Shown piece by piece: positions 10,097 through 32,984 of a stretch of DNA of 64,000 bases. Position numbers and translations under genes: made by a program. Position 1 is the first letter of the stretch. Each line of letters starts with the position of its first letter. The notes under the pieces were generated by a model, which saw only the letters and a program-made list of their open reading frames with translations, made no database searches and was not told the origin of the DNA. The stretch covers positions 124,001-188,000 of IMG/VR virus record IMGVR_UViG_3300003322_000571; one strand, 5' to 3'.

Positions 10097-10376
10097 ATTT
10101 CGTCCCGTAAGTCAGTAATCACAGCAACGCCAAAATCCCCGCGAAGCAAGCAACTACAAACAAAAACATTTTTAGGTACGGCAACAATACCAGCAAGGTA
10201 CCTATTACCCGTAACAGGAACCGCAATCGTATCTAAACAGGTAAAAACCCACAACTAATCACCCTGCAGGGGATCATCACACACCACTACCTCCCCCGGG
10301 AAAGAAACACATACTTCCCGCTATATCCCATAGGGGAAAGCAACATAGATTACCTATAGAAGAGAACCACCCCAAC

Positions 10377-10505
10377 TACTAGTAACCTAGCGCTGCGCAC
10401 TAGTAAACCCCGCATCTTCGCAGGGAAAGAGCAATAAAACCTAACGGGGAGAACAGTACACCCCTATAGCAGAAGTACTAGTAACCTAGCGCTGCGCACT
10501 AGTAA
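10377..10505. repeat. 30-bp perfect direct repeat, two copies
   Basis: TACTAGTAACCTAGCGCTGCGCACTAGTAA at 10377-10406 and 10476-10505. Confidence 0.95.
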
Positions 10506-10722
10506 CCACATGAGGCGAACGATAGGGGAGACGATGATTTCTCCCTAGAGAAACGATCACAGGGGATCGTTGTGCAGGGGCACAAAAGCACCCTCGTTGT
10601 GATATATTGCGCACTAACACGTGTCTTACGGACTTTTCTGCCGGGTTTACTAGTAGACAACAGTGTTTTATTCTGTCTAAACGCCGTTTTGGTTAATTTT
10701 CGTGCGTTTGTCTACTGTTCCT

Positions 10723-10875
10723 GTGGGGAATAATCTACGGTTAACCTAGTGTTTAGGTGAAGATTATTGCGTGCTACTGCGGTGAGCAGGAAATTTTCGT
10801 GCGTAAACAGCGTGAAATCCCCGGGGAGGAGCTAAACATTCCCATGTTAGCTATGTAAGGTGGGGAATAATCTAC
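10723..10875. repeat. 16-bp direct repeat, two copies
   Basis: GTGGGGAATAATCTAC at 10723 and 10860; also AATTTTCGTGCGT at 10695 and 10792. Confidence 0.85.
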
Positions 10876-11225
10876 TGCTCTATTCCCTATAGAAGGAAGA
10901 ATCGTGCGTTGACTGTCTTCTCCCTATAGGGGAGGTATAGACGGTCGCAGTGTATCTCTCCCCCTATAGGGAGAAGTAGACCAACCGTGGTGATTGGTCA
11001 ATATGCTAGTGTGGTGACTTTTATCAGGTGGCAGCAGATTAGTCTCGGTAGTTGGTTAGACCAGTCGAGATGCTAGGTTACTGTGGTGAGTAGCCAACTG
11101 ATGAAAGTGACCTATTAATAGGCATAGGCGATCGACCGGCGGACACCGTTAGGTGAAATCAATCGGTGTGCTCTGTTGACTTTGGAAGACCGTACGATTT
11201 GGTAGGGTATAGGTAGGAGGTTGCG

Positions 11226-11254
11226 ATTATCTTACAGAGTGGGTGGAAGGTCAA
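11226..11254 (-). promoter_or_regulatory. Leftward sigma70-type promoter
   Basis: TTGACC-17-GATAAT on the minus strand. Confidence 0.6.
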
Positions 11255-11399
11255 CAGGGCGGTGTTGTGGTTACTGCTCTGCTGCGATTGTTGCATAATA
11301 GCTGGTAGTTGTCTATGGGAGCTAGATGGGGAAGACACCTATTGACTTTTTGTCGTAGGGAGTGATAATGAAGCGGGGTGGTGTGTGGCCGGTGTTTAT

Positions 11400-11487
11400 A
11401 AAGTTGTTGTCCGCTCTCACCGTCCATCCCCAGGTGTGCCTGTTCGAACGCATGTGTGTATTATCGCTGTTTTAGGGTGAAAGTCAA
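11400..11487 (-). ncRNA. Candidate sRNA family X copy 1 with promoter
   Basis: TTGACT-16-GATAAT then CATGCGTTCGA...GGGATGGACGGTGAGAGCG. Confidence 0.55.
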
Positions 11488-11550
11488 CGGGGCTGTTGAG
11501 TGAGTTGGGGTGCTTCTGCAATGTGTTGGTTTTATTGCAGGAGGTTGTTA

Positions 11551-11898
11551 ATGATTGTGACGAATGATGAGGGGTATTTGGTTGGTGATATTAAGGCTTC
11601 GATCGATTCGATTGTATCGTCTGTGCGTGGGAAGCCTGTAGTCGCTTCGTGGTTGGATAGTGTGTGGCCTGATGGGAAGCCGGTGACGTTTGCTGATTTT
11701 GATCCTGCTGTTGGTGATGTGCCGTGTTATCGGTATAGCGCTTGTATTGCAGGGGAGGGGTATGCTGCGTATGCGAAGCGGGTGGTAGAGGAGGTTAACG
11801 ATGTGCTCATTGTTGAGGACATTGTTACTGCGTCGCATGCTCGGCTGCATCCGTACAACGGTGGTTGGAAGTTGGAGTTGTATTTGCATCGCAAGTAA
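11551..11898 (+). CDS. Hypothetical protein, first gene of the rightward early region
   Basis: GGAGG RBS before ATG 11551. Confidence 0.7.
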   Translation: MIVTNDEGYLVGDIKASIDSIVSSVRGKPVVASWLDSVWPDGKPVTFADFDPAVGDVPCYRYSACIAGEGYAAYAKRVVEEVNDVLIVEDIVTASHARLHPYNGGWKLELYLHRK

Positions 11899-11922
11899 TT
11901 GTACGCGTGTTGTCGATTCTGC

Positions 11923-11951
11923 TTGACTTTCTTGCCTGAAGTGAGTATCGT
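11923..11951 (+). promoter_or_regulatory. Sigma70-type early promoter
   Basis: TTGACT-17-TATCGT. Confidence 0.55.
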
Positions 11952-11983
11952 TGCCTTATTGTAATAGCTAGCGGGAGCTAGAG

Positions 11984-12331
11984 ATGAAGCTTGCACCGAA
12001 GGATCCGTACGCTGCGATGTTGTTTGCGACTGTGCCTGGATGTCAGAACATTCGTTCTCGGAAGCAGATGACGGCGCAGGAGCTGAAGGCTCTCAGTCAT
12101 GAGGAGATTCCTCAACACTGGAAGAGGATTCAGAAGCTGGAGAAGCAGCTGAGCTCGCGTCAGCGGAAGATCGTTGATCGTTTGCTGCATGTGTATGCGA
12201 ACAATCTCGGTGCTGCTGAGGAGCTGGGGTTGCCGAAGCGGATGCAGAAGTTTCTCGAGGCGCATATCAATGCGTACTACATCGAGATGGCGATCGATCA
12301 TGATCGTCTGATGCTTGCCAACATGTACTGA
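11984..12331 (+). CDS. Hypothetical protein
   Basis: RBS plus upstream promoter. Confidence 0.75.
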   Translation: MKLAPKDPYAAMLFATVPGCQNIRSRKQMTAQELKALSHEEIPQHWKRIQKLEKQLSSRQRKIVDRLLHVYANNLGAAEELGLPKRMQKFLEAHINAYYIEMAIDHDRLMLANMY

Positions 12332-12338
12332 GGCAATC

Positions 12339-12536
12339 ATGGCACTCTCTGACGAACAGAAGACGCATATCGAGCAGGTCGTCACTTTGTTGAAGAGCGG
12401 CGAGCTGTCGTGGTATGACGTTGACATGGACGATATGTCTGACGACAAGCAGGCGTACTTCGATCAATTGCATGCGGTGTGGCAGGACGAAGCGATTCGT
12501 GGTCCTGCTTTTCTTGCAATGGTCAACAAGGGTTAA
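12339..12536 (+). CDS. Small acidic protein
   Basis: GAGG RBS. Confidence 0.7.
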   Translation: MALSDEQKTHIEQVVTLLKSGELSWYDVDMDDMSDDKQAYFDQLHAVWQDEAIRGPAFLAMVNKG

Positions 12537-12538
12537 TC

Positions 12539-12895
12539 ATGGCAGTATTTCAAGTGCGGCCGTCTTCGCATGACGGCCTAACAGGTAACTGGTCGGATCT
12601 GACGATGATTGCTGAATCGTTGGACGACATCAAGGCAGCGGTGTGTGCTCACCCTCGGGATGAGGAAGCGTACCGTCGTTGTCCTGCGTATGAGATCGCT
12701 GAGATCGTTCGCGGCTGGATCGGTCAAGGACCGATGCGGAATGGCACTCCGTACGATACGTGGGATGAGATTGACTTTGGCTTCATGTCGCTTGAGCATG
12801 ATGTGCTGAAGATCAGCTACTACACTGGCGGTCGTGGCCGTGATCATGAGATCGTTGAGCGGCGTGGTTATATCACGTTCATGCCGGGGAACTGA
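12539..12895 (+). CDS. Hypothetical protein
   Basis: Operonic ORF. Confidence 0.7.
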   Translation: MAVFQVRPSSHDGLTGNWSDLTMIAESLDDIKAAVCAHPRDEEAYRRCPAYEIAEIVRGWIGQGPMRNGTPYDTWDEIDFGFMSLEHDVLKISYYTGGRGRDHEIVERRGYITFMPGN

Positions 12896-12896
12896 T

Positions 12897-13175
12897 ATGT
12901 TCAAGTACACGTTCGATCCTGCATCGAAGTCCGCTCTCGATCATGAGAAGGCTTCGTACGTCGACGGTCCGTATCCGAAGGGTCGGAAGCCGTTCCCGGT
13001 TCGTCGTCTGCTTCAGCAGCAGATGGAGATCGCACATCGTCCTGGCGCTGATCGTATCTTGGACGCAGCGGTCAGCACTGTCTATTATTCCGACAAGAAA
13101 GTCAAGCATATTCCTGTGGAGGGCGTGCTGATTCCCGCGTTCGTTTTCAAGTGCGAGCCCGTTGCCAAGACGTGA
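12897..13175 (+). CDS. Hypothetical protein
   Basis: Operonic ORF. Confidence 0.7.
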   Translation: MFKYTFDPASKSALDHEKASYVDGPYPKGRKPFPVRRLLQQQMEIAHRPGADRILDAAVSTVYYSDKKVKHIPVEGVLIPAFVFKCEPVAKT

Positions 13176-13218
13176 CAGCTCGTTGATACTTGCCGTACTG
13201 AATTAATAGGAGCCAGCG

Positions 13219-13536
13219 ATGGACGTTCAACTGCATGACTGGGCGCACGCTTTCTTCGGTGTGCTCAAGCCGTTGCTGAAGCGTATCGACAAGACGGAGG
13301 ACGAAGCGATCTCTGATCTGATCTTCGGCGACGAAGGTCTGGTGATGCCGAAAGATGTCGTTGACATCTTCATTGTCCGCCTGGTCGACCAGAAGTTCGT
13401 CGAGTTTAATCCTGGAGATGAGACGGACCGTCGTGAGTACACCGATCCGTTGCATCCGCAACGTGGTCTGATGATCGTCGGACATCCGGAAGAGCCCGGT
13501 GTGTTCTGTGTGTCGTTCTTCAACTACGCACTGTGA
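13219..13536 (+). CDS. Hypothetical protein
   Basis: AGGAG RBS. Confidence 0.75.
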   Translation: MDVQLHDWAHAFFGVLKPLLKRIDKTEDEAISDLIFGDEGLVMPKDVVDIFIVRLVDQKFVEFNPGDETDRREYTDPLHPQRGLMIVGHPEEPGVFCVSFFNYAL

Positions 13537-13546
13537 TGTGACCTAG

Positions 13547-13575
13547 TTGACGTTTGGCAAAGAAAGCTGGATACT
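13547..13575 (+). promoter_or_regulatory. Sigma70-type promoter
   Basis: TTGACG-17-GATACT; short wobble hairpin AAGCTGG/CTGGCTT. Confidence 0.7.
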
Positions 13576-13605
13576 GGCTTCACTGTCTAAACAAAGGAGT
13601 CCGAG

Positions 13606-14364
13606 ATGGACATCTCTCCGAAGCTGCACAAGATGAACATCAACCACCGGTCGGCGGCTGCTGCTGTGCAGCACACGCGAGATTGGATCGAGGGGATTGT
13701 GGACGGCGACATCGTCGTCAACAACAAGGTGATCGTCGATCCCGCACCTCCGAGCCGTGATGTGATCGCCAACGCGGTCTACTTCGTCAACCATCTGCTC
13801 AGCACCGAGCTGACCACGCAACAACTGGTCGAGCACTACGAGTTGCACAAGACGGAGTCGCGGGCGAAAGCCGATTCGTGGGCGATCACGTTCGCACAGG
13901 CGATCGTCGAGCAACTGGTCAAGGCTGACTGTGTGCTGCTCGCTGGTTCGACCGCTGATCTGATCAAGATGGCGTGGGAACGCGCAACGAAGTCGATCAC
14001 GTGCGCCCGCTATCCCGAAGTGTTCTCGAAGGCAGAAGTCGCTTCGACCACTGGCGGTGAAGTCAAGGCTGTTTCCGACATGGTCGATGTCAAGGTCGAA
14101 GTGAAGGCCGATGGCAAGATCAAGAAGGGCGGCAAGGAGCAGCTGGCGATCGCATTGTACCAGAAGTACGTCGCGTCGCTCAACGGTGCACCGTACGTCA
14201 ACCAGGACTTCATCAAGATCCTCGTCGAAGAGGCTGGCATGACCAAGCCGGGTGCAACGACGTACAACTACAACATGAAGAAGAAGTTCGGTGGTCAGAT
14301 CGAGAAGCGTGCGGACGCTGAGCCGGTTCGCATGCTGGCAGCGCCCAAGAAGAAGGCTGCTTGA
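13606..14364 (+). CDS. Family B protein (C-terminal E.G.T..GA.TY helical domain)
   Basis: EEAGMTKPGATTYNYNMKK; strongly C/G-biased codons. Confidence 0.8.
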   Translation: MDISPKLHKMNINHRSAAAAVQHTRDWIEGIVDGDIVVNNKVIVDPAPPSRDVIANAVYFVNHLLSTELTTQQLVEHYELHKTESRAKADSWAITFAQAIVEQLVKADCVLLAGSTADLIKMAWERATKSITCARYPEVFSKAEVASTTGGEVKAVSDMVDVKVEVKADGKIKKGGKEQLAIALYQKYVASLNGAPYVNQDFIKILVEEAGMTKPGATTYNYNMKKKFGGQIEKRADAEPVRMLAAPKKKAA

Positions 14365-14368
14365 CCTG

Positions 14369-14411
14369 TTGATCAAAATGGTTAGTGAGGGGATGATCTC
14401 TTCACTAACCA
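14369..14411 (+). promoter_or_regulatory. Hairpin-centred promoter
   Basis: TTGATC-17-GATGAT; 14-bp stem 14379-14411 with 2 G-T pairs. Confidence 0.7.
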
Positions 14412-14430
14412 ACTACATCTGTTAGGAGAG

Positions 14431-14895
14431 GTGATGAAATATGTCGTCAGTGTCGCGATCAGCGACCAGATTCCTCATGTCAAGACCACTCTGGCGCGGT
14501 CGGGGATCATCGATGTTTCGTGCGAGCACCAGACCGCTAAGCGTGCAATGGATGATTTCGCCGCAGTGATGACGGCGATTGCTGATCATCCGGGTTCTGG
14601 TCCGTACTGGCAGGTCAACCCGATGCAAGTACTGGACGCGATCCTCAGTCCTCCGCAGGAGAACGAGCAATCGAACGTCAAGATCGAGTTCGAGGCACGT
14701 GACGCCAACGGTGGTCCCACGTTCTCGCTGATCACCGTGGCGCTGAAAAGCGAAGAAGGCGAGACGGCGAACACGACCAATTCGTGCATGCATGCGATGG
14801 CATGCAAGATGCTCGACGTGCTCGAAACCATGATCCACGGTGGTGACCTCCCGACTGAGGAAGCTTCGATCCCTGAAGGTGAAACGATTCACTGA
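14431..14895 (+). CDS. Hypothetical protein
   Basis: GGAGAGG RBS. Confidence 0.75.
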   Translation: MMKYVVSVAISDQIPHVKTTLARSGIIDVSCEHQTAKRAMDDFAAVMTAIADHPGSGPYWQVNPMQVLDAILSPPQENEQSNVKIEFEARDANGGPTFSLITVALKSEEGETANTTNSCMHAMACKMLDVLETMIHGGDLPTEEASIPEGETIH

Positions 14896-14897
14896 TC

Positions 14898-15179
14898 ATG
14901 ATCAAGCTGACCGTTAAGGCAGACTACAAACACCGCCCTCCGGCGGTGTTTTTCGTTACCGGTTACATCGACATGGTGTTCGTGAGCTGGAAGATCCTGT
15001 GGGCACTTACACGGGCTGCTTCCAAGCAGAAAGCGAACATTGTACAGGAAGGTGAGAGCGAAAGCTACGGAGTGCACACACTTCACTTCGTACAAAAGGA
15101 CGGGAACAATTCAACTCCGTTCATTAGCATTGATTTCGAAGAAGTTGACGAGGTCCCCGACGGTTGGGAGCCCACGTAG
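14898..15179 (+). CDS. Hypothetical protein
   Basis: Coupled ORF followed by terminator. Confidence 0.65.
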   Translation: MIKLTVKADYKHRPPAVFFVTGYIDMVFVSWKILWALTRAASKQKANIVQEGESESYGVHTLHFVQKDGNNSTPFISIDFEEVDEVPDGWEPT

Positions 15180-15195
15180 CACACAGCGCCCAGAC

Positions 15196-15228
15196 AAAAG
15201 CCCACCATTGTGTGGGCTTTTTCTTTTG
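15196..15228 (+). terminator. Intrinsic terminator
   Basis: AAAAGCCCAC/GTGGGCTTTT plus T tract. Confidence 0.85.
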
Positions 15229-15471
15229 CAGCTATACAAAAATGCTCCATTGGTTTGAATGCTTGCTCTGAAGACAAACGAGCAGAGACGGATGTCGTTT
15301 CTGCATGATAATGAAATTGTGTGAGCGCAGGAGTCGCTCGGGTCTGTGCGCGATAAGCGTGTCGTTAAGACGGTTTAAAGTGCTCTGTTGTCAAGACTCG
15401 ACAGATGACTGATAGTTCACTCACTGGTTCGGAAACGCAACCGCAGGGACACAAGCAAGAAACTGCTCCTG

Positions 15472-15500
15472 TTGACAAGTTACCCTGAATCAGAGATAGT
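15472..15500 (+). promoter_or_regulatory. Sigma70-type promoter
   Basis: TTGACA-17-GATAGT. Confidence 0.75.
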
Positions 15501-15551
15501 TACCGCACTGAATCAAGTTTCTCTCAACCACCTGTAACAAGGAGTTTCATC

Positions 15552-16196
15552 ATGACCCAAGCCCAAGCCGCTCTGTCGTCCGCCATCGCCCTCCTGGCCA
15601 ACACCGATGCGTTCCGCCCCGTGGCGGCCGACGCCGGTGAAGTCAAGGCGCTCGTCGGCGACAAGATCGTGTTCCTGACCGCCGACAAGAAGGAATCCGA
15701 CGTCCTGACCGTCGTGATGGTCAAAAAGAAGGTGACCAACACCGTGTCCGACGTGAACGGCGAGAAGATGAGCGTGCCGATGACGCACTTCGGCGCCGAC
15801 GACATCGAGCTGGAAGACGGCACGTTCATCCGCCTGGTCAAGTCGGTGATCCCGCCGAAGCCGGGCAAGAAGGGCCGCGGCCGCGTCGAAGGCGCGCCGA
15901 CCAAGGCTGACATCTGCCGCGGCCTGTTCATCGCCGCCCCGGATGCGCCGAAGGCCGTGATGTGCAAGCTGTTCCAGTCGGAAGCCGGCTGCACCCGGAT
16001 GGGCGCGAACACGTACTTCCTGTCGATCGCCAAGGCCTACGCGGCCGGCAAGCTGAAGGACCTCGTTCTGGACGAAGGCGTCGTCGCCCTCGTGAAGAAG
16101 GCGATCGAGGCGGCGCGCGCCGAAGCGGAAGCCCAGGCGGCGGAAGCGTCGGCCGAGACCACGACCGAGCAGTCGACCGAAGAAGCCTCCGCCTGA
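15552..16196 (+). CDS. Family B protein
   Basis: SEAGCTRMGANTYF; acidic Ala/Glu tail. Confidence 0.85.
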   Translation: MTQAQAALSSAIALLANTDAFRPVAADAGEVKALVGDKIVFLTADKKESDVLTVVMVKKKVTNTVSDVNGEKMSVPMTHFGADDIELEDGTFIRLVKSVIPPKPGKKGRGRVEGAPTKADICRGLFIAAPDAPKAVMCKLFQSEAGCTRMGANTYFLSIAKAYAAGKLKDLVLDEGVVALVKKAIEAARAEAEAQAAEASAETTTEQSTEEASA

Positions 16197-16278
16197 TCCT
16201 TGATCGGGTGAAGTGAGAGGGTAGGGGGCATAGCCCCCTTCCTTCGTTGTGTGCATCCACCATTCTACTAGTAAACAT

Positions 16279-16629
16279 ATGCCGATCCTCTCTCAAGATG
16301 AACTGGTGCAACTGATGGTTGCGAATCTGGAAGACGGTACGAAGGAGATCCGCTTCGGTGATCATCTCCGTCCCTATGGAATGATGGATGCGCTCGTGAT
16401 TCGTCGTATCCGCACACCCGCAGGAATCCAGTACTGCGTCCGTGAAACGTCGTACCGCGGCGAAGGCAGCGGCATCTACGACCACGGTGCCGTCGAGATT
16501 GCGAAGTGGGCACGCCGGATCGCTGAACGGTACATGAAACCGCATCAGTCTGTTGTTGTTCAAAAGGTTATCGCTGAAGCTCGTGGCCTCAATGAGCCGA
16601 GCTTCTACGTGACCGAATGCAACACCTGA
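16279..16629 (+). CDS. Hypothetical protein
   Basis: ORF from MPILSQ. Confidence 0.65.
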   Translation: MPILSQDELVQLMVANLEDGTKEIRFGDHLRPYGMMDALVIRRIRTPAGIQYCVRETSYRGEGSGIYDHGAVEIAKWARRIAERYMKPHQSVVVQKVIAEARGLNEPSFYVTECNT

Positions 16630-16895
16630 TCTTCTGCCACGACCGCCAGTACGGCGGTCTCGGTATCCAGTTCGTGATCACCCCGAACGATGTGTTCGAG
16701 GCGACAGGCGAGCTAGTTGCCCACACAGCCCTCCTCCCGGAGGGCTTTCGTCCGTCTCAGTCGTCGAGATGGAAGTACGTGCCCCCGTATGGTACAGCAC
16801 CTGAGTACGGAGTTCAACAGGGCGTGATCGAACTGATCGCTGCTGGAGTCAAATACTCCGAGGCCCTCGATCAATATGTCAACGGGACAACATGA
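16617..16895 (+). CDS. Hypothetical protein
   Basis: Coupled ORF. Confidence 0.6.
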   Translation: MQHLIFCHDRQYGGLGIQFVITPNDVFEATGELVAHTALLPEGFRPSQSSRWKYVPPYGTAPEYGVQQGVIELIAAGVKYSEALDQYVNGTT

Positions 16896-17002
16896 CTGCT
16901 AAACAAGCACTTGAGCGAGCTCGAATGGCTCGTGCTCGGTCGTACTACGTTGCACTGATGAAACAACTTGGTGTGCGCCAGTTGACGTTGTTCCTTGTTT
17001 GA
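16892..17002 (+). CDS. Small basic peptide (36 aa)
   Basis: ATGA overlap; MTAKQALERARMARARSYY... Confidence 0.45.
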   Translation: MTAKQALERARMARARSYYVALMKQLGVRQLTLFLV

Positions 17003-17033
17003 GGGTCTGGGTAAAAATACTCAAAAGTGACCC

Positions 17034-17076
17034 GTTGTTAAGTCACCTAGTTTTACATATAGTTGACTTCAACAAC
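17034..17076 (+). promoter_or_regulatory. Hairpin-enclosed promoter
   Basis: TTGTTA-17-TATAGT; GTTGTTAAGTCA/TGACTTCAACAAC arms. Confidence 0.6.
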
Positions 17077-17112
17077 TGAGGAAATGTTCCTCGCAACGAA
17101 AGGAGAGAGCAA

Positions 17113-17298
17113 ATGCGTCATCCCGCACAGGGCAAACCGAATCGTTCTGAAGAAGGACGTGCCCAACGTGCCGCTCGCCACGCCCGCGCTGGCCGCCTGC
17201 AAGAGGTGCGCAACCGCGAGCTGGAGGCCGCTGACGACGCATTCTCCGATGGTGATCACGAGGCCGATGTCTGGGCCGATGAGCACGAGCTCGCGTGA
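17113..17298 (+). CDS. Small hypothetical protein
   Basis: AAGGAGAG RBS. Confidence 0.7.
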   Translation: MRHPAQGKPNRSEEGRAQRAARHARAGRLQEVRNRELEAADDAFSDGDHEADVWADEHELA

Positions 17299-17309
17299 TC
17301 GTTTCTAGT

Positions 17310-17705
17310 GACCACTAGTAAACATTAAGCCGGGCTTCGTGAGGTGGCCCACCGATGCAGTAATCTTTTGTACGCTCAACATCAGATGACATACGGCATG
17401 AAGGTGCTCAAGTAGCACCTGGGAGGCGCGCCGGCCGGACATACCGCGCCGTGGCCGGCGCGCAACTCCCAAACCTGCACAGCGGCAAGCATTTCGCCCC
17501 GCAACCGACAACCAGTGAGTCACGACATAGTGCGTTACGCATAGGGCTTTTGACATGTGCCCGCCCCGAAGTCTAACCGATGGCCATAGGGTCGCTCGCC
17601 GGGATGAAAGCGAGCACACACTAACCAAGTGGTAACCGAGTGCGCTGGCGACCGGAATTGCTGGCGCATTCAACATTTCCAGACTTCGAATTCAGACTAG
17701 AAAGG
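17310..17705 (+). ncRNA. Structured non-coding RNA or long leader candidate
   Basis: Several strong stems (17402-17420, 17421-17470, 17638-17671 with 4 G-T pairs). Confidence 0.45.
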
Positions 17706-17710
17706 TCTAC

Positions 17711-17893
17711 ATGTCCCGCAATTCCAAGAACGCCAAGCGCCACATCGCCGAGAAGGCCGCCTCCACCCAGCGCGTGAAGGGCGACAAGGGCCCCACCAAG
17801 ACGACGCCGAAGCACGGCAAGAAGAAGGCGTGGTGGCAGCTGTTCCCGTCGTACGAGGCGTACATCAAGGGCGCCAAGAAGCAGAAGGACTAA
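17711..17893 (+). CDS. Small Lys-rich basic protein
   Basis: GPTKTTPKHGKKKAWWQ; strong codon bias. Confidence 0.8.
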   Translation: MSRNSKNAKRHIAEKAASTQRVKGDKGPTKTTPKHGKKKAWWQLFPSYEAYIKGAKKQKD

Positions 17894-17923
17894 GCGGTTC
17901 TCCGCACTGTCGCTGCAGACACT

Positions 17924-17950
17924 AAAGGGCTCAACAGAGCCCTTTTGTTT
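17924..17950. terminator. Bidirectional-type intrinsic terminator
   Basis: AAAGGGCTC-AACA-GAGCCCTTT. Confidence 0.8.
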
Positions 17951-18045
17951 TGTCCGCACTATAAGACAGTGAGGCGCTCTCGCCGTCCATCCCGCGTTAG
18001 CTTCGAATCATGTGGTGATTATATTCGAAAGAGGGTAAAAGTCAA
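17950..18045 (-). ncRNA. Candidate sRNA family X copy 2 with promoter
   Basis: TTGACT-16-TATAAT then CATGATTCGA...GGGATGGACGGCGAGAGCG, running into the terminator. Confidence 0.6.
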
Positions 18046-18079
18046 CGAGAGAATTTGCCGGGCGGCGGGGGCGCCCCCG

Positions 18080-18108
18080 TTGTCAACTTACTCTGGTTGT
18101 GTGATAGT
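18080..18108 (+). promoter_or_regulatory. Sigma70-type promoter
   Basis: TTGTCA-17-GATAGT. Confidence 0.65.
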
Positions 18109-18139
18109 TGACTCATCAGTTAACAACCACGAGAACAAA

Positions 18140-18445
18140 ATGACGTTCGAACAAGAGCTGTCGGTCATCGAACAACTGTTCGGTGTCAAGATCGAAATCC
18201 AAGCCGCGCCGGGTTCGCCTGTGTGGTACACCTTCAGTGGCCGACAGTTGACGGTCGAATGCATCGAGGGCATCATCACGCAGAACAGCGGGGTGCTTGA
18301 GTGGCAAGACCCGTTGTCGTGGCATTGCAACAACAACGACAATGTCGCGTACCTGGTGGTCAAGCTGACCGACACCGATGAAGATGTCGTGTATGATCGG
18401 CTGTTCGCGTTCGACTTGACCGACAACGAATTCCACATTGTCTGA
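18140..18445 (+). CDS. Hypothetical acidic protein
   Basis: ORF from MTFEQEL. Confidence 0.7.
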   Translation: MTFEQELSVIEQLFGVKIEIQAAPGSPVWYTFSGRQLTVECIEGIITQNSGVLEWQDPLSWHCNNNDNVAYLVVKLTDTDEDVVYDRLFAFDLTDNEFHIV

Positions 18446-18466
18446 CAACTGACCGGGGAGGTCAAC

Positions 18467-18736
18467 ATGTTCGCCTTCGCCTATGCGGTGTACAGCCGCA
18501 ATCAAGCCCAGCCTCCGCACATTGTTGTCGGTGGCAGTGGCATGGAGTGCGTCAACCGCATCAAGCCGTACATCGAACGCCTGCTCGAGGATGAGCACAA
18601 GGAACGTTTCGGTGGCAATGCAGTCAAGACCGCATACGAAGACCTCAAGCAGGTCGGCACGGTCGCTGAGCTGGAGGTGTTTCTCAGCCGGTGGCTGCCG
18701 TATCGCGGCATGCTGGTTTCCGACCAGATCAAGTAA
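18467..18736 (+). CDS. Hypothetical protein
   Basis: GGAGG RBS. Confidence 0.75.
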   Translation: MFAFAYAVYSRNQAQPPHIVVGGSGMECVNRIKPYIERLLEDEHKERFGGNAVKTAYEDLKQVGTVAELEVFLSRWLPYRGMLVSDQIK

Positions 18737-18898
18737 CGAGTGCCCTGTTGATCCCACGTGGGATCTTTGGGATAGTACACACATCGCGAGCGCAAACAAC
18801 AAAGCGCTTGCGAGACGGACAGAATCAAAACTGACCCGTTGTCCAGAAACGAAATTGTGGGATAGTAGACACATCCCAACGCAACCAGGAGAGATGAA

Positions 18899-19537
18899 AT
18901 GACCACGCTGATCCAAACCCTGTTCGCTGCCAACGAAGGCCGCACCGTCGAAGCGAACAACGACCAGAACAAGGGCATCTTCAAGGTCGCCAAGCTGGCC
19001 GACAAGATCGGCACGATGAAGAACGGCGACAAGGCCGAGTACGTCGTGCTGACGAACGAGAACGACGAAGCGGTCGTCATCATGCTCCACCCGAACGTCG
19101 CCAAGAGCCTGTTCGAGAAGGGCGAAGACGCCAAGACCGGCTACAAGATGGTGCCCGTCGAGACGACCGACGAGCAGACCGTCACGACCGCTGAAGTCGG
19201 TGGTGCCCCCGCGGAAGTGATCCTGGCGACGTCGGAAGGCGAAGTGCTCGCCGCTGTCCCCGCCGGCACGACCGAAGAAGCGTCCGCTGAAACGGCTCCG
19301 GAAGACAACGGTGCCGCCGAAGCGAGCACGGAAACGACCGAAGCTGCCGCGGAAGAGCCGAAGGAGCCGTCGAAGAAGGAGCTGACGATCGCTCTGGTGC
19401 ACGCCGGCTGGGATGCCAAGCTCGCGCGCAAGGACATCATCGCCAAGATGATCGCCGAAATCGGCATGAGCGGCCCCTGCGCGAACACGTACTACCAGAA
19501 CGTGAAGTCGGGCACCTGGGGCGGCCGTAAGGGCTAA
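18899..19537 (+). CDS. Family B protein
   Basis: AEIGMSGPCANTYYQNVK after an Ala/Glu/Thr linker. Confidence 0.85.
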   Translation: MTTLIQTLFAANEGRTVEANNDQNKGIFKVAKLADKIGTMKNGDKAEYVVLTNENDEAVVIMLHPNVAKSLFEKGEDAKTGYKMVPVETTDEQTVTTAEVGGAPAEVILATSEGEVLAAVPAGTTEEASAETAPEDNGAAEASTETTEAAAEEPKEPSKKELTIALVHAGWDAKLARKDIIAKMIAEIGMSGPCANTYYQNVKSGTWGGRKG

Positions 19538-19546
19538 TCCCCACGC

Positions 19547-19573
19547 CAAGAGGGCTTCGGCCCTCTTGCTTTG
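19547..19573 (+). terminator. Intrinsic terminator (UUCG loop)
   Basis: CAAGAGGGC-TTCG-GCCCTCTTG. Confidence 0.8.
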
Positions 19574-19626
19574 ACAAGCGTATTGGTATACAGTACGCTT
19601 ATCCAAGCAACTCTCAAGGACATATC

Positions 19627-19836
19627 ATGCCTTTGACGTGGTACATCGTTTTCTCGCTGCTGATGTCGTTCTGCGTGCTGTTCGCTTCGAAGCCGGGGAC
19701 GACTGGCATCCTGATCAAGCTCGCCGCCATCGTCCACATTGCGCTGTCGCTGTGGACTCTCCACCAAAACCACGACCTCGTCAAGCAAGCGCATCTCTTC
19801 GCTGAGAAGCTGCCGAGCGTCACGATCGAGAAGTGA
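19627..19836 (+). CDS. Small membrane protein
   Basis: Two hydrophobic helices; AAGGA RBS. Confidence 0.7.
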   Translation: MPLTWYIVFSLLMSFCVLFASKPGTTGILIKLAAIVHIALSLWTLHQNHDLVKQAHLFAEKLPSVTIEK

Positions 19837-19843
19837 GGGCAAC

Positions 19844-19999
19844 ATGCTCCCCGTCAAGATCAAACAGCCGCTGGAACGGCTCGAGAAGATGGTGCTCGTC
19901 AGCATCTACGAGGGCAAGCGTCTGCTCGGCTGGCGCTTGGTCAAAGCGCGCAAGACCGGCAACGAGTATCGCATTCCTCACGACTCACGTTGCAAGTGA
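19844..19999 (+). CDS. Small basic protein
   Basis: GAGG RBS. Confidence 0.55.
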   Translation: MLPVKIKQPLERLEKMVLVSIYEGKRLLGWRLVKARKTGNEYRIPHDSRCK

Positions 20000-20003
20000 T
20001 ACC

Positions 20004-20744
20004 ATGAACAACATCAAAGACATGCTCCAGTTCGACGGCGTGGCCGCTGCTGAGGATATGACCGGGCGCAGTGCTCGTTTCGACGAGAATACCGGTTTGT
20101 TGGCGCTCGCTCTGTCGGTAGCGCACAACGATGCGCTGTCCAAGGCTCTGGCGTCCGAGGACGACACGCAGTACAACAACAAGCTGACCAACTACCAGCG
20201 GATCATCACCAGCATGGGGTTCGAGCTCGCGCTGCGCACTCCGTTCGTCGGTCAGGCGTGGGGTGATGAGCCTGTACCGGATGAAGCGCAGTACATCTAC
20301 GCGCACCGTGCCGGCATGCTGCTGATCTTCGATACGTACGGAGGCGACAGCGTCAACTCCGCCAAGGTGTACTACGCGCACCGTCCTCACCAGCTCTCGA
20401 GCTGTCATTACAGCAGCGGTGGCTGGTACTCTGCAGAAGAATGGAAGGATTCACGTTATCCTTCTGACATGTGGTGGTTTGGCGATCACGATGCACGGGT
20501 CGCTCTCCGTCACACGATTCGGCGGCTGCACGATAGTGGGCAATTCCTGACTCCGTGGCCGAAGCCGCATAGCACGCGCAGCTCTCCGTCGGTCTGGATG
20601 TGCCATTACATGGACCACAAGAAGTTGGACAAGTTGGGCAGTCCGGAGTACAAGGAGGCGATCCGCAATGCGGAGGCCAGGCTCCATCAACTCCCGGATT
20701 GGGTCAAGGAGATGATTTCCCCGGTCCTTCCCGTCCAGGACTGA
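20004..20744 (+). CDS. Hypothetical protein
   Basis: Long ORF with phage-like codon use. Confidence 0.75.
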   Translation: MNNIKDMLQFDGVAAAEDMTGRSARFDENTGLLALALSVAHNDALSKALASEDDTQYNNKLTNYQRIITSMGFELALRTPFVGQAWGDEPVPDEAQYIYAHRAGMLLIFDTYGGDSVNSAKVYYAHRPHQLSSCHYSSGGWYSAEEWKDSRYPSDMWWFGDHDARVALRHTIRRLHDSGQFLTPWPKPHSTRSSPSVWMCHYMDHKKLDKLGSPEYKEAIRNAEARLHQLPDWVKEMISPVLPVQD

Positions 20745-20803
20745 CTCGACGACGAGGACGAAGATCAAGGGTGATATTACCCAGTTGATTTCCACAATGA
20801 GAC

Positions 20804-20830
20804 AGGGGAGCGTTAACGCTCCCCTTCCTA
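20804..20830 (+). terminator. Terminator-like hairpin
   Basis: AGGGGAGCG-TTAA-CGCTCCCCT. Confidence 0.65.
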
Positions 20831-20850
20831 TTACAACTGCAGAGGTCCTT

Positions 20851-21129
20851 GTGGAAGCAACACTTGACGAGAAGTTCGTCGGCACCGTGAGGTCGCCGAT
20901 TGAATCATTCTGGCAGGGTTGTACGCTGAAGAAGGCCGCTGATGCGGAGCACTTCTTTGACGTGCCGAATGTCGATGCGATAGGCTATTGCCTTGACCAC
21001 AACCACTTTTCCAGTCTGTCCCCAGAAGCAAAGCGGCTGATCCACCGTGTGATCGATATCTACGGCCGCCATGCTGTCTGCGATTATCTGGCTGACCACA
21101 TCAAGCTGGTCAAGCAGAAAACACACTGA
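20851..21129 (+). CDS. Hypothetical protein
   Basis: GAGG RBS, GTG start. Confidence 0.6.
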   Translation: MEATLDEKFVGTVRSPIESFWQGCTLKKAADAEHFFDVPNVDAIGYCLDHNHFSSLSPEAKRLIHRVIDIYGRHAVCDYLADHIKLVKQKTH

Positions 21130-21622
21130 TGTCCTGTTTGCACTTGTTGCACTGATACGCCTTGCCCTTGCGGGCTTGCGTATGCTGATAGTACGACAGT
21201 TGGTGCGACATACAGCCACAGTTCCACAGGTACGTCTTGACGGTTTTCGCCGTGTCGTACCTGTGCGTGATCTCAGCCTTCGCTTCGAATAGCTTCATCA
21301 TCGACTGCCATTCCCGTCCATGCTGGAAAGGGACGTTGCCGTTGATGTCTTGCACGATCAAGTGCGCCAGCTCATGCGGAACGCTGTTCGCGATGTACGC
21401 GTCAGTGTTGTCCCGCAGGTAAATCATGTTCAAATCGATCGTGCGCGTAGCGTATTCGGCGTAGCCTGCGCTCGCACCACGGATACGATACACGATATTC
21501 GGACGTTCGACAACGATGCGGAGCTCCCGCTCAGCGATCGCGATCAGGTTGTCAACGCGGGCATTGACCCGCTTTTGTAGTTCCAGCTTAGTCACATTTA
21601 ACTCCCTGGCGAACTGCCCCAT
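21110..21622 (-). CDS. sprT: SprT-like zinc metalloprotease
   Basis: PHELAH, HG.EW, C-terminal CGC...CNKC zinc motif. Confidence 0.85.
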   Translation of the reverse strand: MGQFARELNVTKLELQKRVNARVDNLIAIAERELRIVVERPNIVYRIRGASAGYAEYATRTIDLNMIYLRDNTDAYIANSVPHELAHLIVQDINGNVPFQHGREWQSMMKLFEAKAEITHRYDTAKTVKTYLWNCGCMSHQLSYYQHTQARKGKAYQCNKCKQDISVFSA

Positions 21623-21818
21623 TATTGTTATTGAGCAGGACGCAATGTAACGATGCAAATACGTGGTTTACGATGTGGTCTGTAAAAATAATTTGGTGTA
21701 TAACAACCAGTTCAATCGATGACGATGTCGCTAGCGAACGTTATTGACCAATGAAATAAAAGTTGCCGAAAGGGTGAAACAGCGTTGATCAAACCGCGTG
21801 GTTCAAGTAGCTGCCTCG

Positions 21819-21926
21819 TTGATCTTTACCCTAACTAGTCAGATAGTGTGCTTCATGCGATAGGGATTCGTTGTTGAGAAGCAGCTACAACTGCTAATCA
21901 ACATTCAAACGAGTTAGCGATCGCAT
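21819..21926 (+). promoter_or_regulatory. Promoter plus long hairpin 5' leader
   Basis: TTGATC-17-GATAGT; 72-nt four-segment hairpin 21855-21926. Confidence 0.65.
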
Positions 21927-21970
21927 CAGTCCTCTTCTTTTGTGTTCGTCAATCTTTGAAAGGAATCATC

Positions 21971-22426
21971 ATGAGCAACGTCACCGAAAAGGGCCTCATC
22001 GTTCTGAAGGCCGCTTCCAAGCACAACACGCGCGAGAAGATCGCCCGCCGCCTCGGCCAAAGCGTCGCCCAAGTCAACGGCGCCCTGACCGGTCTCAAGC
22101 GCAACGGCCTGATCGAGATCGATGCCGAAGGCGTGATCACCGTGACCCCCGACGCCGCTCCCTACCTGAGCAAGCGCGCCGGTGGCACCGCTGAACGCGC
22201 CACCCGCACCAACACGAAGATGGCCGCTGCGCGTCGCCTGTTCGACAAGTACGCGTCGAAGGAAGGTCGTGGCGGTCTGATCGCTCGCTTCATGAAGGAG
22301 ATCGGCCTGACCGAGAAGGGCGCGTCGACCTACTTCCAGACGATCCGTGTGCAGGCCGGTGTGCCGGCGGGCGCTTTCCAGCGTGCTCCGCGCAAGCCTT
22401 CGACCGTTTCGCGCAAGACGTCGTGA
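21971..22426 (+). CDS. Family B protein with N-terminal HTH
   Basis: REKIARRLGQSVAQVNGALTGLKRNGLI (winged-HTH-like) plus KEIGLTEKGASTYFQ. Confidence 0.8.
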   Translation: MSNVTEKGLIVLKAASKHNTREKIARRLGQSVAQVNGALTGLKRNGLIEIDAEGVITVTPDAAPYLSKRAGGTAERATRTNTKMAAARRLFDKYASKEGRGGLIARFMKEIGLTEKGASTYFQTIRVQAGVPAGAFQRAPRKPSTVSRKTS

Positions 22427-22446
22427 ACCCTCACCTCGTCCGCTGC

Positions 22447-22475
22447 AAGGGGAGCCATCGGCTCCCCTTTTTTAT
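22447..22475 (+). terminator. Intrinsic terminator
   Basis: AAGGGGAGCC/GGCTCCCCTT plus T tract. Confidence 0.85.
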
Positions 22476-22719
22476 TTGCTGCGTTCTCTCGTGACATGCT
22501 GTGTTGCTTATTGATTATTGAATCAGTGAACTGATTGTCATGATAAAGATTTCTAAACACAACGCATCCATGCAATTTTTGCTGCAAAAAGATGGTGGAG
22601 AAAACCCCCTAGCAGGCAAAAATTGCTAGACACTTTTATATAGAGCACCCGCTCTATCCTGTTGTCTTCTCGGACATCTGGTAGTATCATTCTCCCATCG
22701 TTAAACAAACGAGGCAGAC

Positions 22720-23073
22720 ATGGCCAAGATCGTTACGAAAGATTCCCTGCGAGACCTGCTGCTGAGCTCGCCTCAAGACAAGCAGGTCCGAATCATCGGT
22801 CGCGCTCTCGTTCGGATCATGGAGCGGCAAACGGAAGCCGAAAAGAGCCTGAAGATGACAACCGATTCGAACAACATCGGTTTCACCAGTGCAGATGCGA
22901 AGACGGGAACCAAGTCAGCGGAGTACTTCAAGCGGACTGGCCGTCTGATGCCGTTCGCGTTCGAGCGGTGGATCAGTGCTGACAGCACCGGCTATCCTCG
23001 GATCTGCCGCTACCATCGTCAACTCAACGAAGTCGCTGAGGCAAAAGCCGAAAGTGCCCAGTTGACTCTGTAA
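22720..23073 (+). CDS. Hypothetical protein
   Basis: GAGG RBS; N.IGFTSADA..G motif. Confidence 0.8.
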   Translation: MAKIVTKDSLRDLLLSSPQDKQVRIIGRALVRIMERQTEAEKSLKMTTDSNNIGFTSADAKTGTKSAEYFKRTGRLMPFAFERWISADSTGYPRICRYHRQLNEVAEAKAESAQLTL

Positions 23074-23098
23074 CCAAATGGGAGTATTATACTCCCAT
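23062..23098 (+). promoter_or_regulatory. Hairpin promoter class A
   Basis: TTGACT-17-TATTAT inside ATGGGAGTA-TTA-TACTCCCAT. Confidence 0.85.
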
Positions 23099-23116
23099 CA
23101 ATCAACGGAGTGCGAA

Positions 23117-23410
23117 ATGCAATTCTCGAAGGAACAGCTGATCTACATCGCGAGCAGCCTCGGCAACATGGACGTTGACTTCATGAAGCAGCTGGCGTGG
23201 GGAATGGTCGCCAATCACGCGGAAGTGATGGCGGAAATCTCCGAAAGCAGCGACATCCATACGCTGCCGAACACGAAGGACACCAAGGAACACGTCAAGG
23301 AGTACCTGTCCGACATGTTCCCGGAAATCCTCACGAAGCTGAAGGAGGAGATCGACGCGTGCCCGATCAACGTCAAGTACTCGTGGAGCGTCGACGTCAA
23401 GATGGAATGA
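23117..23410 (+). CDS. Acidic hypothetical protein
   Basis: GGAG RBS. Confidence 0.75.
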   Translation: MQFSKEQLIYIASSLGNMDVDFMKQLAWGMVANHAEVMAEISESSDIHTLPNTKDTKEHVKEYLSDMFPEILTKLKEEIDACPINVKYSWSVDVKME

Positions 23411-23527
23411 TGGACGGGGCCGGCTCAGGGGCAAGGGAGGGAGGAGGTGCCTGAGCGGTCAGGTGGCGATCCCGTCTCTCCCTGACCAGAGTCCGTCTAT
23501 AATACCGGAATCCATGCAGGAATGCAA
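23410..23527 (-). ncRNA. Candidate sRNA with anti-SD loop, with promoter
   Basis: TTGCAT-17-TATTAT; two 7-bp stems, loop CACCTCCTCCCTCCCTTGCC. Confidence 0.5.
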
Positions 23528-23639
23528 CGCCCATTAATAATGAGCTTGCAGTCCAGTATGGTATTGCTCTTTCTGTTGACTGTCTGATTTGTGCACTTAA
23601 TAATCTGCACAACTTAACAACCAACAGAAAGGGTCAATC

Positions 23640-23816: not shown

Positions 23817-23820
23817 ACTG

Positions 23821-23858
23821 TTGACTTGTCGGCCGGATGGGAGTATTATGCTCCCATC
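23821..23858 (+). promoter_or_regulatory. Hairpin promoter class A
   Basis: TTGACT-17-TATTAT; GATGGGAGTA-TTA-TGCTCCCATC (T-G wobble). Confidence 0.85.
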
Positions 23859-32983: not shown

Positions 32984-32984
32984 G

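What the first reader, a model, noticed from the sequence alone, without database searches (positions are those of the whole stretch)
10260..11500. Repeat-rich strand-switch: origin or genome-end signal
Seen: about 1.2 kb without genes, where gene direction and AC/GT skew invert. It holds a 30-bp perfect repeat twice (99 bp apart, each flanked by ACTAGT), GTGGGGAATAATCTAC twice, AATTTTCGTGCGT twice, and roughly 8 variants of CCCTATAG(GGGA) at about 10326, 10353, 10461, 10543, 10885, 10921 and 10960. Leftward promoters sit at 11254 and 11487. Inference: a replication origin or terminal-repeat/packaging site that precedes the first-injected early region.
Basis: partly seen in the sequence, partly recalled or inferred. 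Interest (0 to 1): 0.6.

Follow-up and report, generated by a model that had tools for sequence, protein, structure and literature searches.

The report
Repeat-rich gap heading phage early genes
A 1.3-kb gene-free stretch packed with repeats and palindromes in a 350-kb jumbo phage sits where genes diverge and heads a 26-kb block of small, host-transcribed early genes. It is that block's control and boundary region, possibly a physical DNA end, which is a well-marked but familiar kind of phage feature.

Summary
The window is bases 124001-188000 of a circularly assembled 350,089-bp jumbo phage whose large terminase is closest to Xanthomonas phage XacN1. Window 10097-11550 has no plausible gene and holds the genome's longest ORF-free stretch. 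Its repeats far exceed shuffles. It is the densest CTAG/TAG spot in a genome that otherwise avoids CTAG threefold. The G+T/A+C skew flips at about 10550, inside the gap.

To the right lies a 26-kb GC-richer block (about 12.0-37.75 kb) of about 50-60 small ORFs with consensus sigma-70 promoters, so this is a host-polymerase early region. The gap carries three such promoters. One drives a short conserved RNA-like element that recurs in the block and in two related phage lineages.

A relative (TerL 76% identical) has the same gap at the same place, and the only alignable DNA is that element and one 15-mer. In XacN1, PA5oct and T5, gaps of this kind mark a boundary of a long terminal repeat that holds early genes. 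The only other CCTATAGGG in this genome lies at the far edge of the block.

So "start of the early region" is supported, "terminal-repeat boundary" is plausible but untested because reads were unavailable, and "replication origin" is weakly supported.

The parts
10097..11550 (.). Whole gene-free divergent gap, between the start of the leftward gene (ATG at 10096) and the first rightward gene (ATG at 11551, GGAGG at 11540).
   Evidence: Frames opened by reading TAG as sense look non-protein. No Rfam or tRNA hit.
10374..10505 (+). Two copies of a 33-nt direct repeat (10374-10406 and 10473-10505). Each holds two ACTAGT sites and three CTAG, two of them spaced 8 bp.
   Evidence: This is the densest 300-bp CTAG window of the genome.
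10327..10971 (.). Seven CCCTATAG-type palindromic sites at 10327, 10353, 10462, 10543, 10885, 10922 and 10962.
   Evidence: CCCTATAGGG occurs only at 10922 and 10962 in 350 kb.
10645..10659 (+). GTTTACTAGTAGACA, the only 15-mer conserved with the related phage. It sits at the skew flip and the local AT maximum (10644-10703).
   Evidence: The related YACTAGTAAAC motif occurs in intergenic DNA of the early block, upstream of or overlapping promoter-like sequences.
10695..10875 (+). Two-copy motifs: AATTTTCGTGCGT (10695, 10792) and GTGGGGAATAATCTAC (10723, 10860).
   Evidence: TTTTCGTG-type motifs also occur in the relative's gap and near the XacN1 and PA5oct repeat boundaries.
10917..10976 (.). 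Perfect 16-nt inverted repeat with a 28-nt spacer, giving a hairpin or cruciform of about 20 pairs.
   Evidence: The DNA fold is -17.6 kcal/mol, z -4.1.
11170..11493 (.). Promoter cluster: leftward TTGACC-N17-GATAAT (11254 to 11226), rightward TTGACT-N16-GATAAT (11342 to 11369), leftward TTGACT-N16-GATAAT (11487 to 11460), and a -35-like box at 11175.
11409..11469 (-). Conserved short RNA-like element that begins at the -10 box of the 11487 promoter. Its core 21-mer is GGGGATGGACGG(T/C)GAGAGCGG.
   Evidence: A 1-nt indel between copies rules out a conserved protein.
17974..18024 (-). Weaker copy of the RNA-like element, behind the leftward promoter at 18045.
   Evidence: E 3e-5.
27369..27430 (-). 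Second strong copy of the RNA-like element. It runs into a two-way terminator at 27322-27344.
11551..37750 (+). GC-richer block (0.549 against 0.473) of about 50-60 small plus-strand ORFs with sigma-70 consensus promoters. This is the presumed host-polymerase early region and the candidate collapsed terminal repeat.
   Evidence: The same GC contrast is seen in the relative.
38040..38073 (+). Composite site at the far edge of the block: TGCGACCGT, then CCTATAGGG, then GGTTAACCTA. Each of these words is otherwise found only in the gap.
   Evidence: GGTTAACCTA occurs twice in the genome, and CCTATAGGG occurs only in the gap and here.

Best explanation
The gap is the non-coding control and boundary region at the head of the phage's host-polymerase early-gene block.

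Shown:
- Genes diverge from it.
- It carries three consensus sigma-70 promoters. The rightward one (11342) can serve the first early gene. The leftward one at 11487 drives a roughly 55-90-nt conserved RNA-like element, one of a small family scattered antisense through the block.
- Its centre (10600-10720) is where strand composition flips. That centre holds the one 15-mer conserved with a relative.
- The rest is arrays of CTAG- and TATAG-containing palindromes in a genome that otherwise avoids CTAG.

Inferred:
- The palindromes and two-copy motifs are binding sites for dimeric DNA-binding proteins.
- In the relatives XacN1 and PA5oct, and in T5, the same anatomy marks a boundary of a long direct terminal repeat that contains the early genes. 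By that analogy the gap is probably one boundary of a repeat of about 27 kb (window about 10.6-10.9 kb to about 38.05 kb), collapsed in this circular assembly. It would then be the terminase recognition and cut region, and one physical end of the virion DNA, from which early genes are read inward.

My sub-confidences: early-region head and promoter hub 0.8; terminal-repeat boundary 0.4.
For: - Divergent ORFs and the longest ORF-free stretch in the genome.
- Promoters in the gap. 33 of 90 strong sigma-70 matches lie in genome 130-170 kb, mostly on the plus strand.
- The flanking early ORFs have no relatives or known families.
- The RNA-like element is present 3 times here, 3 times in relative G001 and once in G005, always behind a -10 box.
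- G001 (TerL 76% identical) is collinear and has a 1.75-kb gap at the same place. Only the element and GTTTACTAGTAGACA can be aligned.
- CTAG/TAG maximum of the genome; palindrome density at the 99.6th percentile.
- TerL is nearest to XacN1 (47%) and PA5oct (40%).
- XacN1 has a 65,875-bp terminal repeat whose inner boundary lies in a 735-bp divergent gene-free gap.
- PA5oct has a 39,080-bp repeat with about 105 genes, many highly transcribed early; the phage relies on host RNA polymerase. Its inner boundary lies in a 595-bp gene-free gap. TCTATAGGT follows both boundaries at +31 to +39 nt, accounting for 4 of the 12 sites in 287 kb.
- In this genome CCTATAGGG lies only in the gap and at 38057, fused to a second genome-unique word. 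That is 300 bp from the GC change-point.
- T5 Repeat Region 3 is a 1.2-kb untranslated maze of repeats and palindromes that straddles the inner end of its terminal repeat.
Against: - No reads could be examined, so there is no coverage step and no molecule ends.
- The 25-bp end overlap only shows a circular assembly.
- In XacN1 the repeat carries the tRNA cluster. Here the tRNAs lie about 90-155 kb away around the circle, next to another gene-free gap. The repeat, if any, could be there instead.
- XacN1's own small-ORF block is headed by a short gap internal to its repeat.
- The CCTATAGG motif is absent from relative G001, and no motif pair brackets its block.
- The motifs next to the XacN1 cut are not conserved in Xoo-sp13.
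- Sigma-70 promoters and a paralogous gene pair continue past 38.06 kb.
- The composite site's significance is post hoc.
Confidence: 0.5

Rival explanations
1. The gap is a transcription-control hub only: divergent early promoters, operators for phage or host repressors, and a small regulatory RNA. The genome would be packaged headful, or its terminal repeat would lie elsewhere, so the gap has no role in DNA ends.
For: - Everything actually shown fits this reading: the promoters, the palindromes and the RNA-like element family.
- The YACTAGTAAAC motif is shared between the gap and intergenic, partly promoter-like sites in the block, in both phages.
- The 33-nt repeat has CTAG sites spaced 8 bp, as in operators of CTAG-reading repressors. 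This is recalled from memory and was not tested.
- XacN1's small-ORF block is headed by a gap internal to its repeat.
Against: - It does not explain why the only other CCTATAGGG plus GGTTAACCTA lies at the far edge of the block.
- It does not explain why 1.3-1.75 kb is kept gene-free in two lineages whose flanking genes turn over.
- No repressor gene was identified. The Trp-repressor family search gave 11.8 bits, which is not significant.
Confidence: 0.3
2. The gap is a replication origin. Transcription from the local promoters would open the AT-richer core at 10644-10703, the repeats would bind an initiator, and replication would leave in both directions, giving the local skew flip.
For: - The keto skew flips inside non-coding DNA at about 10550 with the polarity expected of an origin.
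- The local AT maximum is 65% over 60 nt, at the genome's 99th percentile.
- Direct and inverted repeats sit next to promoters, as in the T7 and T4 origins (established knowledge).
- The XacN1/Xoo-sp13 boundary gap conserves about 9 GTTAA repeats in AT-rich DNA.
Against: - The genome-wide cumulative GC skew has its minimum near 320 kb and its maximum near 195 kb. The dip here is as wide as the leftward gene block.
- No DnaA box with 1 mismatch or fewer.
- Repeat families have two copies or are irregular, not spaced iterons.
- Neighbouring ORFs match no replication family.
Confidence: 0.15
3. The gap and the 38.05-kb site are recombination scars that flank a horizontally acquired 26-kb module of different GC content.
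For: A GC step of 0.473 to 0.549 with related words at both edges. Synteny with G001 breaks just beyond the far edge.
Against: The same GC contrast, gene order and gap exist in G001, whose TerL is only 76% identical. The arrangement is therefore old and maintained. A plausible alternative cause of the higher GC is that early genes are tuned to the host's translation before the 55 phage tRNAs are made.
Confidence: 0.05

Closest known systems
Inner boundary of the 66-kb direct terminal repeat of Xanthomonas phage XacN1 (PMC5852040; record AP018399.1, 65391-66126)
   Same: It is the nearest characterised TerL relative (47%). Its boundary gap is gene-free and divergent and carries back-to-back sigma-70 boxes and short repeat arrays. 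Small ORFs are read away from it. An AAATTTTGGTGCGT motif (15 of 17 like ours) lies 16 nt inside the cut, and the cut falls at TACTAG.
   Different: There is no alignable DNA. The XacN1 repeat carries the tRNA cluster. Its arrays are GTTAA and TGATATCA, not CTATAG or ACTAGT. Its ends were mapped by coverage and PFGE, while ours are unmapped.
Boundaries of the 39-kb terminal repeat of Pseudomonas phage PA5oct (PMC7318152; NC_071039.1)
   Same: The repeat holds about 105 genes, many highly transcribed early; the phage relies on host RNA polymerase, and its promoters have TTGAC and TATAATA boxes. The repeat also holds two abundant ncRNAs. The inner boundary lies in a gene-free gap and is followed by an array of CTATAGG/CTTATAAG repeats. 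The same 9-mer follows the other boundary.
   Different: PA5oct is AT-rich and the motif flanks differ. Its large gap lies at the tail of the early block, not the head. TerL is only 40% identical.
Phage T5 Repeat Region 3 / injection-stop region (bioRxiv 10.1101/866236)
   Same: [quoted passage not shown] It is conserved while neighbouring ORFs are not, sits at the inner end of a terminal repeat of pre-early genes, and has HNH endonuclease genes inserted nearby. The relative G001 also has an HNH_3 gene in its gap.
   Different: T5 has paired DnaA boxes and this gap has none. T5 is an unrelated phage lineage. Two-step injection is unknown here.
Left end of phage T7 (terminal repeat, repeat arrays, promoters A0 and A1-A3, secondary origin); from established knowledge
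   Same: About 0.9 kb of non-coding DNA between the genome end and the first early gene, with several strong host promoters including a leftward one.
   Different: Here genes diverge on both sides. No single-subunit RNA polymerase gene was detected (but that control search also rang nowhere). CTATAGGGAGA resembles a T7 promoter start but is confined to this gap.

Membership tests
Long direct-terminal-repeat boundary / terminase cut region | Twofold read coverage across the repeat in virion DNA. | not testable with these tools
Long direct-terminal-repeat boundary / terminase cut region | Fixed molecule ends (read-start pile-ups) at the boundary. | not testable with these tools
   Same reason. 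Contig ends of the relative's ten contigs show no common break, which is uninformative.
Long direct-terminal-repeat boundary / terminase cut region | The boundary lies in a gene-free, repeat-rich gap beside a block of small early genes. | tested here: met
   The same is true in XacN1 and PA5oct.
Long direct-terminal-repeat boundary / terminase cut region | A related short motif at both boundaries. | tested here: inconclusive
   CCTATAGGG and GGTTAACCTA recur only at 38057-38073. There is no such pair in relative G001.
Long direct-terminal-repeat boundary / terminase cut region | The terminase belongs to a clade that makes long terminal repeats. | tested here: met
   The best tblastn hits are XacN1 and its relatives, then PA5oct. 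Repeats are documented for XacN1 and PA5oct.
Iteron/DnaA-type replication origin | Three or more regularly spaced iterons. | tested here: not met
   Repeat families have two copies. The CCCTATAG variants are irregularly spaced and in both orientations.
Iteron/DnaA-type replication origin | DnaA boxes. | tested here: not met
   None with 1 mismatch or fewer in 10000-11700.
Iteron/DnaA-type replication origin | AT-rich unwinding element. | tested here: inconclusive
   65% AT over 60 nt at 10644, at the genome's 99th percentile but not extreme.
Iteron/DnaA-type replication origin | Genome-wide cumulative skew extreme. | tested here: not met
   The global minimum is near 320 kb and the maximum near 195 kb. 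Only a local dip occurs here.
Host sigma-70 early promoter cluster | Near-consensus -35 and -10 hexamers with 16-18 nt spacing, upstream of early genes. | tested here: met
   Three sites score 10 of 12 matches. This exact form occurs 4 times in the genome, 3 of them here.
Host sigma-70 early promoter cluster | Transcripts start there early in infection. | not testable with these tools
   No RNA data are available.
T5 injection-stop region | Eight paired DnaA boxes within inverted repeats. | tested here: not met
Rfam RNA families | Covariance-model match. | tested here: not met
   No match at E of 1 or lower in 9500-12500.
T7-type single-subunit RNA polymerase promoter | The promoter motif recurs before many genes, and the phage encodes the polymerase. 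| tested here: not met
   The motif is confined to this gap. PF00940 was not found, although the control search also rang nowhere.

The most novel reading that the evidence does not exclude
The CTAG/TATAG palindrome arrays plus the conserved 15-mer form a DNA-entry or packaging signal. That would be a terminase site or a T5-like injection stop, and it would define a terminal repeat of about 27 kb in an uncultured XacN1-like jumbo-phage lineage. The repeated 21-mer-bearing transcripts would be a new family of small early antisense RNAs shared by at least three phage lineages.
Probability: 0.12. Interest if true: 0.6.

Novelty: new member of a known kind. Interest (0 to 1): 0.4.

Why it matters
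Long terminal repeats of jumbo phages are collapsed and invisible in metagenome assemblies. A sequence signature that marks their boundaries would allow genome ends, true genome length and the first-expressed genes to be predicted for uncultured giant phages. The signature here is a gene-free gap, the densest CTAG and palindrome content in the genome, a promoter cluster, a compositional step, and a motif that recurs at the far edge.

The conserved short RNA-like element and the CTAG-rich sites are concrete handles for studying how such phages time their early genes. If the gap turns out to be only a promoter and operator region, it is ordinary.

Tried and rejected
- **Reading TAG as sense.** I tried this only because the genome carries two tRNA-CUA genes. 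It opens 263- and 189-codon frames, but they overlap a real gene, need 7-8 read-throughs and look non-protein. Rejected; table 11 was used throughout.
- **RNA and origin scans.** Rfam, tRNA and DnaA-box scans of the gap found nothing.
- **T7-like promoter idea** (from CTATAGGGAGA). The motif is confined to the gap and no such polymerase was found.
- **DNA searches for relatives.** Searches in cultured phages found none. The 27-nt repeat core is absent from IMG/VR. A scan for CTCCCTATAGGGRAG returned only single, unrelated hits.
- **Other contigs.** Locus L004 (a partial homologue of the left flanking gene) and G005 gave no comparable gap.
- **Population variation.** Ten contigs of the relative are 100% identical in the gap, so population variation could not be used.
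- **Covariation in the RNA-like element.** I inspected the five aligned copies by eye and found no consistently covarying stem. No formal test (fold_alignment or the count of structure pairs) was run.
- **Trp-repressor family.** The search of the phage gave 11.8 bits, which is not significant.
- **Second boundary motif.** The AATTTT[CG]G site near 39.4 kb is just a terminator context.
- **XacN1 repeat genes.** Genes in the first 35 kb of the XacN1 repeat map to our genome only once, ORF012 to window 20.1-20.6 kb. Synteny therefore cannot place the repeat.

Full report
**Setting**

The window is bases 124001-188000 of a single 350,089-bp IMG/VR virus record. Its "terminal repeat" is only a 25-bp end overlap, so the record is a circular assembly. 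The genome has 55 tRNA genes. Its large terminase is most like those of the jumbo phages XacN1 (47%), Xoo-sp13, Stenotrophomonas CM1/RAS14, RsoM2USA, Atu_ph07 and PA5oct (40%). The finding lies at genome positions 134260-135500, far from the arbitrary ends of the assembly.

**Observation**

- Repeated 11-mers exceed dinucleotide shuffles by one to two orders of magnitude.
- Six of the seven CCCTATAG hits in the genome lie here. So do three of the four matches to TTGACY-N16/17-GATAAT.
- The gap contains the longest ORF-free stretch of the genome.
- CTAG is avoided threefold genome-wide (424 seen, 1363 expected). The gap is nonetheless the genome's maximum for CTAG and for TAG/CTA.
- Palindromes of 8 bp or more are at the 99.6th percentile.
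- Genes leave the gap in both directions. Five tandem phrog_17693 paralogs and one more ORF lie on the minus strand, and ORFans run on the plus strand from ATG 11551.
- The G+T/A+C bias flips at about 10550, inside non-coding DNA.

**What lies to the right**

From about 12.0 to 37.75 kb the GC content is 0.549, against 0.473 elsewhere (two-change-point fit). The DNA is tiled by about 50-60 small plus-strand ORFs. Many of them follow TTGACA-N17-TATACT-type promoters and hairpin terminators. Of the 90 strong sigma-70 matches in the genome, 33 fall in genome 130-170 kb. This is the signature of a host-polymerase early region.

In PA5oct, RNA-seq showed that many genes of its equivalent block are highly transcribed early, that the phage relies on host RNA polymerase, and that the block lies within a 39,080-bp terminal repeat.

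**Anatomy of the gap**

1. *Promoter cluster, 11170-11493.* There are two leftward promoters and one rightward promoter.
2. *RNA-like element.* The 11487 promoter is followed at once by a conserved element of about 55 nt.
   - It recurs behind leftward promoters at 27.4 kb and 18.0 kb.
   - It occurs three times in relative G001 and once in a third lineage, G005.
   - A 1-nt indel between copies, with conservation continuing past it, excludes a conserved peptide.
   - The 27.4-kb copy runs into a two-way terminator, giving a transcript of about 90 nt.
   - By eye I found no consistently covarying stem. The invariant part is a purine-rich 21-mer.
3. *Centre, 10600-10720.* It holds the skew flip, the local AT maximum (65%) and GTTTACTAGTAGACA.
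4. *Left and middle parts.* These carry the 33-nt repeats (ACTAGT, with CTAG sites spaced 8 bp), the seven CCCTATAG-type palindromes and the two-copy motifs.

**Comparative evidence**

IMG/VR contig G001 (TerL 76% identical) is collinear with genome positions 107-276 kb. At the syntenic place it has a 1.75-kb, divergent, gene-poor gap that heads a GC-rich small-ORF block. That gap carries an inserted HNH_3 gene.

The flanking ORFs are barely conserved. The only alignable DNA is the RNA-like element, in two tandem copies, and the 15-mer, in two copies. TTTTCGTG-type motifs are also present. The related word YACTAGTAAAC(AT) recurs in intergenic DNA of the early block in both phages. One copy overlaps a -10 box and another directly abuts an ATG. 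This links the gap to regulation of the block. CCTATAGG is absent from G001. The leftward block beside the gap is about 7 kb here but only two genes in G001, so it is variable accessory DNA next to a conserved gap.

**The terminal-repeat lead**

- *XacN1.* Its repeat is 65,875 bp, mapped by coverage and PFGE. The inner boundary lies in a 735-bp divergent gene-free gap. Both cuts are preceded by AAATTTT (30-38 nt away) and CGTYAGTT (17-19 nt away). One cut falls at TACTAG, 16 nt after AAATTTTGGTGCGT; ours is AAATTTTCGTGCGT.
- *PA5oct.* The inner boundary of its repeat lies in a 595-bp gene-free gap and is followed by three CGTCTATAGGTT units and four related units. The other boundary is followed at +39 nt by the same TCTATAGGT. 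Those are 4 of the 12 sites in 287 kb.
- *T5.* Its 1.2-kb untranslated Repeat Region 3 straddles the inner end of its terminal repeat.
- *This genome.* The only CCTATAGGG outside the gap is at 38057. It is fused to GGTTAACCTA, which occurs only there and at 10739, and is preceded by TGCGACCGT, the reverse complement of 10941-49. It lies 300 bp from the GC change-point, and synteny with G001 breaks just beyond it.

A collapsed repeat of about 27 kb, bounded by the gap and this site, would fit all of this.

**Cautions**

- This is analogy plus one post-hoc motif coincidence.
- The XacN1 repeat contains the tRNA cluster. Ours lies about 90-155 kb away around the circle, next to another gene-free gap that turned out to hold a GOLLD RNA.
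- XacN1's own small-ORF block starts at a short gap inside its repeat.
- The motifs next to the XacN1 cut are not conserved in Xoo-sp13. What is conserved there are back-to-back -35 boxes, GTTAA arrays and TGATATCA palindromes.
- G001 shows no bracketing motif pair.
- Promoters and a paralogous gene pair continue past 38.06 kb.
- Reads could not be consulted.

**Origin reading**

The flip has the polarity of an origin. However, it is as wide as the leftward gene block, and the global skew extremes lie near 320 and 195 kb. There are no DnaA boxes, no regular iterons and no replication genes nearby. The skew of the flanks is equally well explained by strong divergent transcription. The origin reading is not excluded, because ends and origins coincide in T7.

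**Verdict**

The gap is the head and control region of the early block (about 0.8). It is plausibly a terminal-repeat boundary and genome end (about 0.4). It is less likely an origin (about 0.15). It is a new member of a known kind of phage feature. The small RNA-like family and the CTAG singularity are its most original details.

Noticed in passing
L075:1098-1509 (genome 330097-330508, + strand; outside the window): A full-length GOLLD RNA (RF02032, 207 bits, E 1.9e-58) fills the genome's second-longest ORF-free stretch, just upstream of the large tRNA cluster.
   Followed up: partly
Whole genome; tRNA-CUA genes at genome 332868-332944 and 344214-344286: The genome has 55 tRNA genes, including two amber suppressors. 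TAG ends only 8 of 436 called genes and none of the 88 long ones. CTAG is depleted threefold. XacN1 also has two CUA suppressors. There is no sign of wholesale TAG recoding.
   Followed up: partly
window 17974-18024 (-) and 27369-27430 (-): Further copies of the short RNA-like element, each behind a strong leftward sigma-70 promoter and antisense to the early genes. The core 21-mer is also present in IMG/VR contigs G001 and G005.
   Followed up: partly
window 38040-38073: A composite of three words otherwise unique to the gap, lying between two paralogous small membrane-protein ORFs (37833-38051 and 38105-38263) at the GC step.
   Followed up: partly
window 16267, 17314, 25657; G001 131.5-141.9 kb: YACTAGTAAAC(AT) recurs in intergenic DNA of the early block in both phages. 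One copy overlaps a -10 box and another directly abuts an ATG. It may be an operator or a promoter element of one temporal class.
   Followed up: no
window 7582-9759 (-): Five tandem paralogs of phrog_17693 (function unknown; distant homologues in phiRSL1, BcepSauron and Sinorhizobium phiM12-like phages), followed at 5693-6364 by a MazG-like ORF. This leftward block is largely absent from relative G001.
   Followed up: partly
L066:3291-3731 (relative's gap): An HNH_3 homing-endonuclease gene sits inside the homologous gap of the related phage, as HNH genes do between T5's repeat regions.
   Followed up: no
window 10598-10609: TGATATATT, an extended -10-like sequence on the plus strand about 50 nt to the right of the skew flip. 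It is a possible start of rightward transcription through the repeats. This was seen by eye only.
   Followed up: no
window 42-1481 (-): A 479-aa ORF whose C-terminal half resembles tail-fibre or endosialidase-chaperone proteins of many podophages.
   Followed up: no
L039:3140-3270 and L073 (XacN1 and Xoo-sp13): The terminal-repeat boundary gap of XacN1 is conserved in Xoo-sp13. The conserved parts are about 9 GTTAA(C/A) repeats in AT-rich DNA and two TGATATCA palindromes. This could be an origin or a terminase-binding array, and as far as I read it is not discussed in the XacN1 paper.
   Followed up: partly
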